Assembly: GCF_001194135.2 (NCBI RefSeq)
Contig: NC_068981.1
Span: 5,575,451 to 5,637,885 of the forward strand
Direction: 5' to 3'
Length of the DNA: 62,435 nt
Source of the DNA: Octopus bimaculoides
Lineage: Eukaryota
Made by a program: the position numbers and the translations under genes. The notes under the pieces were generated by a model, which ran no database searches, had not been told where the DNA came from, and saw nothing but the letters and a program-made list of their open reading frames with translations. Of this stretch, positions 35,702 to 35,813 are shown one piece after another (position 1 is the stretch's first letter; each line of letters begins with the position of its first letter).

Positions 35702-35813
35702 TTAAAATATTGTCAGCGTATTTCACTACTACGGCTACTAGAAGACCACCGAAGGACTGTAAACAAATTGCTAACCACACAACCCAGTTGTAACCAAAGA
35801 CGAAACCTTTCTC
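35702..35813 (-). pseudogene. 112-bp copy of the SLC35A2 exon segment 38326-38437
   Basis: 107/112 identical; encodes [37 protein letters not shown]; no splice sites or start codon. Confidence 0.95.

What the first reader, a model, noticed from the sequence alone, without database searches (positions are those of the whole stretch)
35702..35813. Host exon segment pasted into a dead LINE 2.6 kb downstream of its source
Seen: 112 bp of SLC35A2 coding sequence (38326-38437), same orientation, 5 mismatches near the ends around an 82-bp identical core. It sits between RTE residues SRKADI and IPS, with RTE flanks colinear with the copy at 53.8-54.1 kb, and has no TSD or poly(A). It covers the conserved [14 protein letters not shown] motif; both strands stay open. 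Inference: a templated insertion during double-strand-break repair from nearby DNA or RNA. Plus-strand transcription would give RNA antisense to the mRNA; the copy could also act as a conversion donor.
Basis: partly seen in the sequence, partly recalled or inferred. Interest (0 to 1): 0.7.

Follow-up and report, generated by a model that had tools for sequence, protein, structure and literature searches.

The report
Exon fragment patched into dead LINE
In the California two-spot octopus, about 110 bases of a sugar-transporter gene's coding exon were copied into a dead jumping-gene remnant 2.6 kb away; two sister octopus species have the same remnant without the copy, so this is a genuine but ordinary scar of DNA-break repair.

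Summary
Window 35702-35813 duplicates 38326-38437 (112 bp, 5 mismatches, blastn E 1.5e-46), which lies inside the last coding exon of the Octopus bimaculoides UDP-galactose translocator gene (SLC35A2-like, minus strand).

The copy sits in a dead, 5'-truncated RTE-like LINE fragment. The orthologous fragment in O. vulgaris and O. sinensis has a clean empty site: 7 bp (AATCTCT) where O. bimaculoides has 115 bp.

The junctions show no target-site duplication and no poly(A). Two bases are lost, one junction has 4-5 bp of microhomology (TCTC[T]), and the other has 0-2 ambiguous bases. This matches a class 2 templated sequence insertion, a patch copied during break repair.

Mis-assembly is unlikely. 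At two mismatches the copy keeps the ancestral base while the living exon has since changed synonymously. The other three changes are copy-specific, and two of them are non-synonymous, so the copy is drifting.

The template could be DNA or RNA; the segment spans no intron. A DNA template in cis is favoured because the donor is so close.

One oddity is unresolved. O. sinensis RefSeq isoform X3 joins the same exon base to the same RTE base through a non-canonical GG...TT "intron". This is probably an annotation artefact, but it could mean an RNA template.

Verdict: a new example of a known kind, of modest interest.

The parts
35702..35813 (-). Exon-derived copy (112 bp homologous to 38326-38437; coding sense on the minus strand, antisense to the host RTE). 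Bases found only in the exon: 35702-35809.
   Evidence: 95.5% identity, E 1.5e-46; tblastn aa 269-306 of P0001; five-sequence alignment
35700..35701 (.). Left junction (+ coordinates): 2 ambiguous bases 'TC'. Either non-templated filler or exon 'TT' with one later substitution. The two RTE bases 'AA' present in the empty site are missing here.
35810..35814 (.). Right junction: TCTC (TCTCT in the sister species) is shared by the exon (CCTTTCTCTTTT) and the uninterrupted RTE (AAATCTCTAAT), giving 4-5 bp of microhomology.
38326..38437 (-). Source segment, internal to the last coding exon (no splice junction inside it).
38174..38791 (-). Last coding exon of the UDP-galactose translocator gene (acceptor TTTCAG|GTTACA at 38791; TAA stop at 38176-38174).
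48531..48869 (-). Preceding coding exon (about aa 38-150; GTAAGT donor after 48531).
35238..36887 (+). Host element: RTE-like LINE copy A. It is 5'-truncated and carries many stop codons. It is interrupted by the exon patch (35700-35814) and by a nested foldback repeat (36119-36553). Orthologous copies are at L002:~52946-53556 and L001:~86587-87197.
53298..54120 (-). RTE-like copy B (opposite strand, 72-82% identical to A). It is continuous across the insertion point and serves as the family control for the ancestral state.
33622..33674 (-). Conserved alternative 3'-terminal exon of the same gene (polypyrimidine tract plus AG acceptor, ...RKRTIFSKPLSFSFLF*, AATAAA overlapping the stop codon (33627-33622)). 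It is annotated in O. vulgaris (CAI9715726.1). It places the insert inside the probable transcription unit.

Best explanation
This is a neutral scar of germline break repair. In the O. bimaculoides lineage, after it split from the O. vulgaris/O. sinensis lineage, a double-strand break (or collapsed fork) occurred inside a dead RTE-like LINE fragment. That fragment lies about 2.4 kb past the stop codon of the UDP-galactose translocator gene.

[quoted passage not shown] It was extended for about 108-110 nt using the exon DNA as template, then released and joined to the other end. Two bases were lost and there are 0-2 filler bases.

Since then the patch has drifted (three private substitutions) while the exon took two synonymous substitutions. 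No function is implied.

Shown: the duplicate, the empty orthologous sites, the junction anatomy and the polarity of the mismatches. Inferred: that a break was the trigger, which end primed synthesis, and that the template was DNA and not RNA.
For: 1. Filled versus empty. The orthologous RTE copy in O. vulgaris (L002) and O. sinensis (L001) aligns on both sides at 88-92% identity, but has 7 bp (AATCTCT) where O. bimaculoides has 115 bp.

2. The empty sequence is continuous with independent RTE family copy B, so it is ancestral and not a deletion scar.

3. Junction anatomy: no TSD, no poly(A), a 2-bp microdeletion, TCTC(T) microhomology at one junction and 0-2 ambiguous bases at the other. These are the defining features of class 2 templated sequence insertions (PMC5110952), and the size is in range (73-414 bp there).

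4. Polarity. At 35706 and 35796 the patch matches the O. vulgaris and O. sinensis exons (and Argonauta at 35796), so it keeps the ancestral base, while the O. bimaculoides exon later changed synonymously (ATT>ATC, TTT>TTC). Changes at 35789, 35801 and 35805 are private to the patch, and two are non-synonymous.

5. At 35751 the patch shares the O. bimaculoides-specific C.

6. The donor is 2.6 kb away in cis on one gap-free contig. In the RNA-patch system donors came from 18 of 24 chromosomes with no regional preference, so this closeness favours a local DNA template.

7. There is no A>G (RNA-editing) signature in the patch.

8. The orientation, antisense to the RTE, excludes template jumping during the RTE's own retrotransposition. 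The RTE copy in any case predates the species split.
Against: The copied segment contains no exon-exon junction, so a DNA template cannot be told from a pre-mRNA or mRNA template.

The site probably lies inside the gene's own transcription unit, so the gene's RNA is equally 'local'.

At 108+ nt the patch is longer than typical Pol theta templated insertions (2-35 bp). It is direct and 2.6 kb away, unlike MMBIR-type insertions as searched for in PMC8421209 (inverted, within 100 bp).

Only one junction shows clear microhomology.

O. sinensis RefSeq isoform X3 (XP_036359678.1) joins exactly the same two bases at the RNA level. If that junction is real in RNA, a cDNA origin is favoured.

No raw reads were available to confirm the junctions. 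The sequence comes from the 2015 shotgun assembly plus Hi-C.

The post-split timing drawn from 35751 rests on one site at a CpG, where parallel C>T decay in the outgroups is possible.
Confidence: 0.6

Rival explanations
1. RNA-templated (cDNA) patch. The plus-strand 3' end on the left side of the break (...GCAGACA-3') primed reverse transcription on the gene's own transcript, using reverse transcriptase from active octopus LINEs. This made plus-strand cDNA of the exon segment, whose 3' end (…CCTTTCTC) then annealed to the right end through TCTC(T) microhomology. The process resembles endonuclease-independent LINE insertion acting on a non-LINE RNA, which is the class 2 TSI model of Onozawa and colleagues.
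For: Class 2 TSIs are proposed to be reverse-transcribed RNA patches and are enriched for transcribed sequences. The junction features and size match. An RTE-clade LINE shows evidence of recent germline and somatic activity in O. bimaculoides (PMC9115989), so RT is available. The insert site is probably within the gene's own transcription unit, so the transcript is tethered nearby. The microhomology sits where a cDNA 3' end would be captured. O. sinensis isoform X3 carries the identical exon-to-RTE junction in an annotated mRNA.
Against: The patch contains no spliced junction and no poly(A). It has no A>G editing signature. The X3 junction implies a GG...TT intron that cannot be slid onto canonical sites. 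It is absent from the independent O. vulgaris annotation, so it is more likely an artefact of annotation evidence. Under this model, the left junction, where priming would occur, has no convincing primer-template complementarity.
Confidence: 0.25
2. Assembly artefact. The short-read assembler threaded exon reads into the RTE through a shared repeat, and no such insertion exists in the animal.
For: The contig-level sequence comes from a short-read shotgun assembly later scaffolded with Hi-C. The 82-bp identical core is longer than typical k-mers. No independent assembly or gene call carrying the junction could be found.
Against: The copy differs from the exon at five positions lying on both sides of the core, within 7-9 bp of each junction, so reads joining RTE flank to copy-specific bases must exist. 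Two of those positions carry the ancestral state seen in O. vulgaris and O. sinensis but no longer present in the O. bimaculoides exon, and reads from that exon cannot produce it. Both flanks are adjacent halves of one orthologous RTE. There is no gap between 22651 and 46531.
Confidence: 0.03
3. The patch is ancestral and was precisely deleted in the common ancestor of O. vulgaris and O. sinensis.
For: Only one effective outgroup lineage was sampled for the RTE locus (O. vulgaris and O. sinensis differ by 0.65%). The Argonauta flank is not alignable to the RTE.
Against: A deletion would have to remove 115 bp and leave 7 bp that match the uninterrupted RTE family sequence in copy B. The patch carries the O. 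bimaculoides-type C at 35751. The patch-to-exon divergence (4.5%) is no greater than the between-species flank divergence (3-7%).
Confidence: 0.02
4. Transposon-mediated capture. The exon piece was picked up by the RTE (template switching during reverse transcription, or transduction), or was carried in by another mobile element or as a retrocopy.
For: It lies inside a LINE. LINE reverse transcriptases do switch templates.
Against: The same RTE copy exists without the patch at the orthologous site in two species, so the patch arrived after the RTE was already in place and dead. The patch is antisense to the RTE. It has no TSD, poly(A), terminal repeats or other element ends. RTE copy B lacks it.
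Confidence: 0.02

Closest known systems
Class 2 templated sequence insertions / polymorphisms (TSI, TSIP; Onozawa et al. 2014-2016, reviewed in PMC5110952)
   Same: A copy-paste patch with the donor left intact. No TSD and no poly(A). Microdeletion, microhomology and possible filler bases at the junctions. The size (108-115 bp) is within the reported 73-414 bp. It is heritable, so it arose in the germline or early embryo. The donor is a transcribed exon.
   Different: The donor is 2.6 kb away in cis and in the same orientation, not in a 'distant genomic region'. An RNA origin, the favoured model for TSIs, is not demonstrable here. This is a substitution found between species in a cephalopod, not a human polymorphism.
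Polymerase-theta-mediated end joining with templated insertions (TMEJ; e.g. PMC7454005, PMC7165422)
   Same: Synthesis primed at a short microhomology, followed by end joining. Templates can be adjacent or kilobases away. The three patch-specific mismatches lie 5, 9 and 21 nt from the microhomology, which would fit an error-prone start to synthesis (inference only).
   Different: Reported templated insertions are mostly 2-35 bp, whereas this one is over 100 nt. Only one junction has clear microhomology. Dependence on the enzyme cannot be tested.
MMBIR / FoSTeS template-switch insertions (e.g. PMC8421209, PMC5120786)
   Same: A polymerase template switch at microhomology that copies a nearby sequence in cis and then returns.
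   Different: MMB-TI events as operationally defined in PMC8421209 are inverted copies with the template within 100 bp. This one is a direct copy from 2.6 kb away, with no other associated rearrangement.
LINE-mediated retrocopies / class 1 TSIs / processed pseudogene fragments
   Same: A fragment of a gene's exon relocated into non-coding DNA in a genome with active RTE LINEs.
   Different: It lacks every hallmark: no TSD, no poly(A) tail, no 3'-end bias (the fragment is internal to the CDS), and no spliced junction.

Membership tests
Class 2 templated sequence insertion (TSI/TSIP) | The inserted block is a copy of a sequence elsewhere in the genome, with the donor intact | tested here: met
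   112 bp at 95.5% identity to 38326-38437; the donor exon is intact and encodes a protein 100% identical to XP_014779820
Class 2 templated sequence insertion (TSI/TSIP) | An empty (pre-insertion) allele or site exists | tested here: met
   Orthologous RTE in O. vulgaris and O. sinensis has 7 bp versus 115 bp. Polymorphism within O. bimaculoides was not tested
Class 2 templated sequence insertion (TSI/TSIP) | No target-site duplication, no poly(A) tract, no cryptic poly(A) signal at the insert's end | tested here: met
   Direct reading of the junctions against the empty site
Class 2 templated sequence insertion (TSI/TSIP) | NHEJ-type junctions: microdeletion, microhomology and/or non-templated bases | tested here: met
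   2 bp (AA) lost; TCTC(T) microhomology; 0-2 ambiguous bases 'TC'
Class 2 templated sequence insertion (TSI/TSIP) | Donor in a distant genomic region | tested here: not met
   The donor is 2.6 kb away on the same gap-free contig, in the same orientation
Class 2 templated sequence insertion (TSI/TSIP) | Derived from reverse-transcribed RNA | not testable with these tools
   The segment is internal to one exon. It has no splice junction and no editing signature. The X3 coincidence is unresolved
LINE-mediated retrocopy / class 1 TSI | TSD of at least 5 bp and a poly(A) tail | tested here: not met
   Neither is present
Pol theta templated insertion (TMEJ) | Insertion begins and/or ends at microhomology with the break ends | tested here: inconclusive
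   4-5 bp at one junction, none convincing at the other
Pol theta templated insertion (TMEJ) | Short insert (typically 2-35 bp) | tested here: not met
   108-114 nt copied, against the range quoted in PMC7454005
MMBIR templated insertion (MMB-TI as defined in PMC8421209) | Inverted copy of a template within 100 bp | tested here: not met
   Direct copy, with the template 2.5-2.6 kb away
RTE-clade LINE (host element) | Reverse-transcriptase domain | tested here: inconclusive
   Copy B translation: RVT_1 28.4 bits against a cut-off of 29.6 (only the C-terminal part is preserved), plus a PHD-like finger at 23.2 against 24. Copy A gives no hit. The YADD-containing motif ...ELLYADDLALIAESL... is readable in copy B
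RTE-clade LINE (host element) | Clade assignment (APE+RT single ORF, phylogenetic placement with RTE) | not tested
Both copies are 5'-truncated and no named reference was compared. RTE elements are documented in Octopus (PMC9115989)
SLC35A2-type nucleotide-sugar transporter (source gene) | Nuc_sug_transp domain and orthology to the UDP-galactose translocator | tested here: met
   PF04142, E 8.3e-85. 100% identity to NCBI 'UDP-galactose translocator isoform X1 [Octopus bimaculoides]'. Substrate specificity was not tested

The most novel reading that the evidence does not exclude
The patch is a fossil of RNA-templated break repair. A transcript that joined the exon base after ...AATATTTTAAAA directly to the RTE base TGTCTGC... 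(the junction that RefSeq annotates today as O. sinensis isoform X3, through a non-spliceosomal GG...TT 'intron') existed as RNA. In the O. bimaculoides germline it was reverse-transcribed, plausibly by an active RTE reverse transcriptase, and written back into the genome at its own acceptor site. That would make this a natural, datable case of transcript-to-genome repair in an animal germline, with the template RNA species still observable in a sister species.
Probability: 0.12. Interest if true: 0.65.

Novelty: new member of a known kind. Interest (0 to 1): 0.3.

Why it matters
This is a clean example of a templated patch insertion in a cephalopod germline, polarised by evolution. It has base-resolved filled and empty sites in three species, a known donor 2.6 kb away, and an internal clock from substitutions in the copy versus the donor.

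Examples like this help calibrate how often break repair copies nearby sequence in animals outside mammals, flies and worms. They also bear on whether octopus genomes, which have active RTE elements, show RNA-templated repair.

There is a practical point for annotation. Small exon-derived patches can generate spurious isoforms: O. sinensis XP_036359678.1 has a C-terminus that matches this patch junction and needs a non-canonical intron. They can also cause mis-mapping of RNA-seq and editing calls onto 38326-38437.

Nothing found here suggests the patch affects the transporter gene itself.

Tried and rejected
1. Independent assembly support for the junctions. Exact look-ups of the two junction-spanning ORFs (75 aa minus strand, 69 aa plus strand) found nothing. 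A homology search with the chimeric ORF returned only ordinary transporter fragments and did not even list the parent protein, so its sensitivity for this short query was poor. An exact look-up of isoform X3 failed because only the longest product per gene is indexed. None of these is evidence against the insertion.

2. I first read the O. sinensis and O. vulgaris 'gene ranges' as showing a 3.8-kb 3'UTR covering the site. That was wrong. The O. sinensis range ends exactly at the stop codon of isoform X3, so ranges are CDS-based. Evidence for transcription through the site rests instead on the conserved alternative terminal exon.

3. Canonical-splicing origin in O. bimaculoides. The exon there has a GT right after the copied segment (AAAAG|GTTTTG), and the RTE has AG acceptors (GAG|ATTTG). 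But the predicted spliced junction, TTAAAAG+ATTTGTCTGC, needs two separate 2-nt deletions to give the observed TTAAGATGTCTGC. A direct exon-to-RTE join needs one substitution. Rejected as less parsimonious.

4. Mismatch clustering as a mechanistic signal. The 82-bp clean core is unlikely under five uniformly placed changes (P = 0.006). Once polarised, however, only three changes belong to the patch. Their clustering near one end gives P of about 0.02-0.05, post hoc. This fits an error-prone start to synthesis or later gene conversion of the core, but is not significant enough to claim either.

5. The first self-BLAST without low-complexity filtering was swamped by microsatellites and was repeated with filtering.

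6. I ran no further search on naming the RTE clade, because that does not bear on the finding.

Full report
**1. What is in the sequence**

The window comes from *Octopus bimaculoides* chromosome CM046601.1 (GCA_001194135.2). The long minus-strand exon at 38791-38174 encodes residues about 151-355 of a protein 100% identical to NCBI 'UDP-galactose translocator isoform X1' (XP_014779820). Pfam gives Nuc_sug_transp at E 8.3e-85. The preceding coding exon is at about 48869-48531.

The duplicate is exactly as reported. 35702-35813 matches 38326-38437 in the same orientation over 112 bp. Mismatches are at 35706, 35789, 35796, 35801 and 35805, and there is an 82-bp identical core. blastn within the window gives E 1.5e-46, and there is no third copy in the window or in the 90-kb locus L003.

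The copied piece is wholly internal to the exon and encodes [35 protein letters not shown].

**2. The host element**

The copy lies in a decayed, 5'-truncated non-LTR retrotransposon fragment on the plus strand (about 35238-36887). It has many stop codons in every frame. It also contains a nested foldback repeat at 36119-36553.

A second family member lies on the opposite strand at 54120-53298. It is colinear with the first and lacks the exon piece. Its translation reads ...ELLYADDLALIAESL...VNLAKIKVVVSKTLFLSGKWPCSICRKGVGRNSIRCTLCKLWIHKRCSG... and gives near-threshold Pfam hits: RVT_1 at 28.4 bits against a cut-off of 29.6, and PHD at 23.2 against 24.

I did not verify the 'RTE' clade label. 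RTE-clade LINEs are documented as active in octopus (PMC9115989).

**3. The decisive comparison**

I fetched the orthologous loci from *O. sinensis* (L001), *O. vulgaris* (L002) and *Argonauta hians* (L004). The same RTE fragment, with the same nested repeat, is present downstream of the orthologous gene in *O. vulgaris* and *O. sinensis*. It aligns on both sides of the insertion point at 88-92% identity, but the exon piece is absent.

| Site | Sequence |
|---|---|
| Sister species (empty) | ...GCAGACA·AATCTCT·AATCCC... |
| *O. bimaculoides* (filled) | ...GCAGACA·TC·TTAAAAT...ACCTT·TCTC·C·AATCCC... |

The filled site has 115 bp where the empty site has 7 bp, a net gain of 108 bp. The empty sequence is continuous with RTE family copy B, so it is the ancestral state and not a deletion scar.

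Junction anatomy:
- No target-site duplication and no poly(A).
- Two RTE bases (AA) are lost.
- TCTC (TCTCT in the sister species) is shared by the exon and the RTE at the right junction, giving 4-5 bp of microhomology.
- At the left junction, the two bases 'TC' are either filler or exon 'TT' with one later change.

**4. Polarity of the five mismatches**

I used the *O. vulgaris*, *O. sinensis* and *Argonauta* exons to polarise them.

- At 35706 and 35796 the copy matches the *O. vulgaris* and *O. sinensis* exons (and *Argonauta* at 35796), so it keeps the ancestral base. The living *O. bimaculoides* exon changed afterwards, both times synonymously (ATT>ATC, TTT>TTC).
- 35789, 35801 and 35805 are private to the copy. 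One is synonymous and two are non-synonymous (D>N, F>V).
- At 35751 the copy shares a C found only in *O. bimaculoides*. This is a CpG site, so parallel decay in the outgroups cannot be excluded.

Three conclusions follow. The copy is a real, old paralogous fragment, because reads from today's exon cannot produce ancestral bases. It evolves without coding constraint. Neither sequence has visibly converted the other at the informative sites.

Substitution divergence between *O. bimaculoides* and *O. vulgaris* is 3.1-4.7% in the 300 bp on each side and 7.0% over 1.35 kb. *O. vulgaris* and *O. sinensis* differ by 0.65%. With 3 of 112 private changes in the copy and 2 later changes in the exon, the event falls roughly mid-way along the *O. 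bimaculoides* branch, with wide error.

**5. Mis-assembly**

The insert and its source lie on one gap-free stretch; the nearest N-runs end at 22651 and start at 46531. Copy-specific bases lie within 7-9 bp of each junction.

The contig sequence derives from the earlier shotgun assembly scaffolded with Hi-C (PMC9068888), and I could not obtain reads. Look-ups for independent gene calls across the junction found nothing. The evolutionary argument in section 4 makes an artefact very unlikely, at about 3%.

**6. Mechanism**

The features match class 2 templated sequence insertions. These lack TSD and poly(A), have microdeletion, microhomology or filler at the junctions, and measure 73-414 bp (PMC5110952). 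They do not match LINE-mediated retrocopies.

Capture by the RTE itself is excluded. The RTE copy predates the species split and the patch postdates it, and the patch is antisense to the RTE.

Two versions of the patch model give the same product.

- **A, DNA-templated.** The minus-strand 3' end ...AGAGA anneals at GAGA in the exon 2.6 kb away. It is extended by about 108 nt and then joined to the other end.
- **B, RNA-templated.** The plus-strand 3' end ...GCAGACA primes reverse transcription on the gene's transcript. The cDNA end ...TTTCTC is then captured by TCTC(T) microhomology.

The segment spans no intron and shows no A>G editing signature, so the two cannot be separated directly.

I favour A (about 0.6 against 0.25). 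The donor is very close in cis, whereas RNA-patch donors in the experimental system were scattered over 18 of 24 chromosomes. The caveat is that the site probably lies inside the gene's own transcription unit, so its RNA is also local.

The patch is longer than typical Pol theta insertions (2-35 bp). It does not fit the operational MMBIR signature of an inverted copy within 100 bp.

The three copy-specific changes lie 5, 9 and 21 nt from the microhomology. This would suit an error-prone start to synthesis, but the clustering is only marginal (P about 0.02-0.05, post hoc).

**7. Transcription context**

*O. vulgaris* isoform CAI9715726.1 (P0125) ends in an alternative 3'-terminal exon about 3.7 kb past the canonical stop. 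The exon is conserved in *O. sinensis* and *O. bimaculoides* (window 33674-33626). It has a polypyrimidine tract and an AG acceptor, and AATAAA overlaps its stop codon (33627-33622).

If it is used in *O. bimaculoides*, the primary transcript runs through the RTE and the patch in gene sense. The RNA would then carry a second sense copy. No evidence for plus-strand transcription was found or sought beyond this.

**8. An unresolved coincidence**

*O. sinensis* RefSeq isoform X3 (XP_036359678.1, P0127) ends ...[25 protein letters not shown]. The chimeric ORF across the *O. bimaculoides* patch reads ...[23 protein letters not shown]. The tail is encoded by the RTE starting exactly at the empty site (L001:86888), and the head ends exactly where the patch ends in the exon.

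The implied intron is ...TTAAAA|GGCTTC...GAGATT|TGTCTGC. Its ends are GG...TT, and the flanking bases allow no sliding onto canonical sites. The independent *O. vulgaris* annotation has no such isoform.

The most economical reading is that the model was built from evidence carrying the *O. bimaculoides*-type contiguous sequence, aligned across species. That would make it an annotation artefact, and incidentally a hint that the patch is transcribed in gene sense.

The alternative is that such an RNA junction really exists in *O. sinensis*. That would point to a cDNA origin of the patch (model B). This is the most novel reading not excluded, and I give it about 0.12.

**9. Verdict**

The repair-patch interpretation is supported and sharpened. 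The functional speculations are unsupported.

This is a new, well-resolved example of a known mutational class, most likely neutral. Interest 0.3.

Noticed in passing
L001:82969-82983 joined to L001:86888-86932 (O. sinensis); compare window 35661-35888 minus strand: RefSeq isoform X3 of the O. sinensis UDP-galactose translocator (XP_036359678.1) has a C-terminus that requires a non-canonical GG...TT intron. Its two ends are exactly the two bases that are contiguous DNA at the O. bimaculoides patch junction. It is probably a spurious model built from evidence carrying the patch. If it is real, it bears on the template question.
   Followed up: partly
window 33674-33622 (minus strand); L002:~54387-54439; L001:~87839-87891: A conserved alternative 3'-terminal exon of the transporter gene lies about 4.5 kb (O. 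bimaculoides) or 3.7 kb (O. vulgaris) past the canonical stop. It has a polypyrimidine tract plus AG acceptor, a short ORF (...RKR[R/T]IFSK...FLF*) and AATAAA overlapping its stop codon. It is annotated only in O. vulgaris (CAI9715726.1, which would encode a truncated 184-aa protein).
   Followed up: partly
window 36119-36553: A foldback (inverted-repeat) element of about 435 bp is nested in RTE copy A. It is also present at the orthologous site in O. vulgaris and O. sinensis. Related copies occur at about 17952-18144, 28601-28862, 29558-29937, 42817-43181, 47764-48329 and 58140-58497.
   Followed up: no
window 37076-37290 and more than 20 other places (e.g. 8551-8711, 18746-18906, 23645-23805, 27733-27893, 32372-32532, 42286-42446): A very abundant repeat unit of about 165 bp (72-85% identity between copies). 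It looks like a SINE or similar short interspersed element. Not classified.
   Followed up: no
window 38322-38321 (gene sense AAAAG|GTTTTG): In O. bimaculoides, but not in O. vulgaris or O. sinensis (GGC there), the exon has a GT dinucleotide 2-3 bases past the end of the copied segment, so it looks like a splice donor. I tested whether a spliced transcript could explain the junction and rejected it as less parsimonious.
   Followed up: yes
window 41428-41974: A long imperfect trinucleotide-type repeat in the intron. It gives artificial ORFs rich in G/S, V or L/P, depending on frame and strand.
   Followed up: no
window 2518-2617, 4127-4607, 13892-14671, 16344-17254, 22590-22651, 46531-46681, 47571-47587, 58743-58995: Eight assembly gaps (N runs). 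None lies between the patch and its source, but the intron and the far flanks are incompletely assembled. (TA)n/(CA)n-type microsatellites are frequent (e.g. 33921-34425, 35084-35230, 37782-37840).
   Followed up: no
window 35700-35814: The net gain of 108 bp is a multiple of three, so the dead RTE reading frame continues through the patch (SRKADI...IPSVKY). The antisense frame of the source exon is also open over this stretch. Both look like coincidence or inheritance, not selection.
   Followed up: yes
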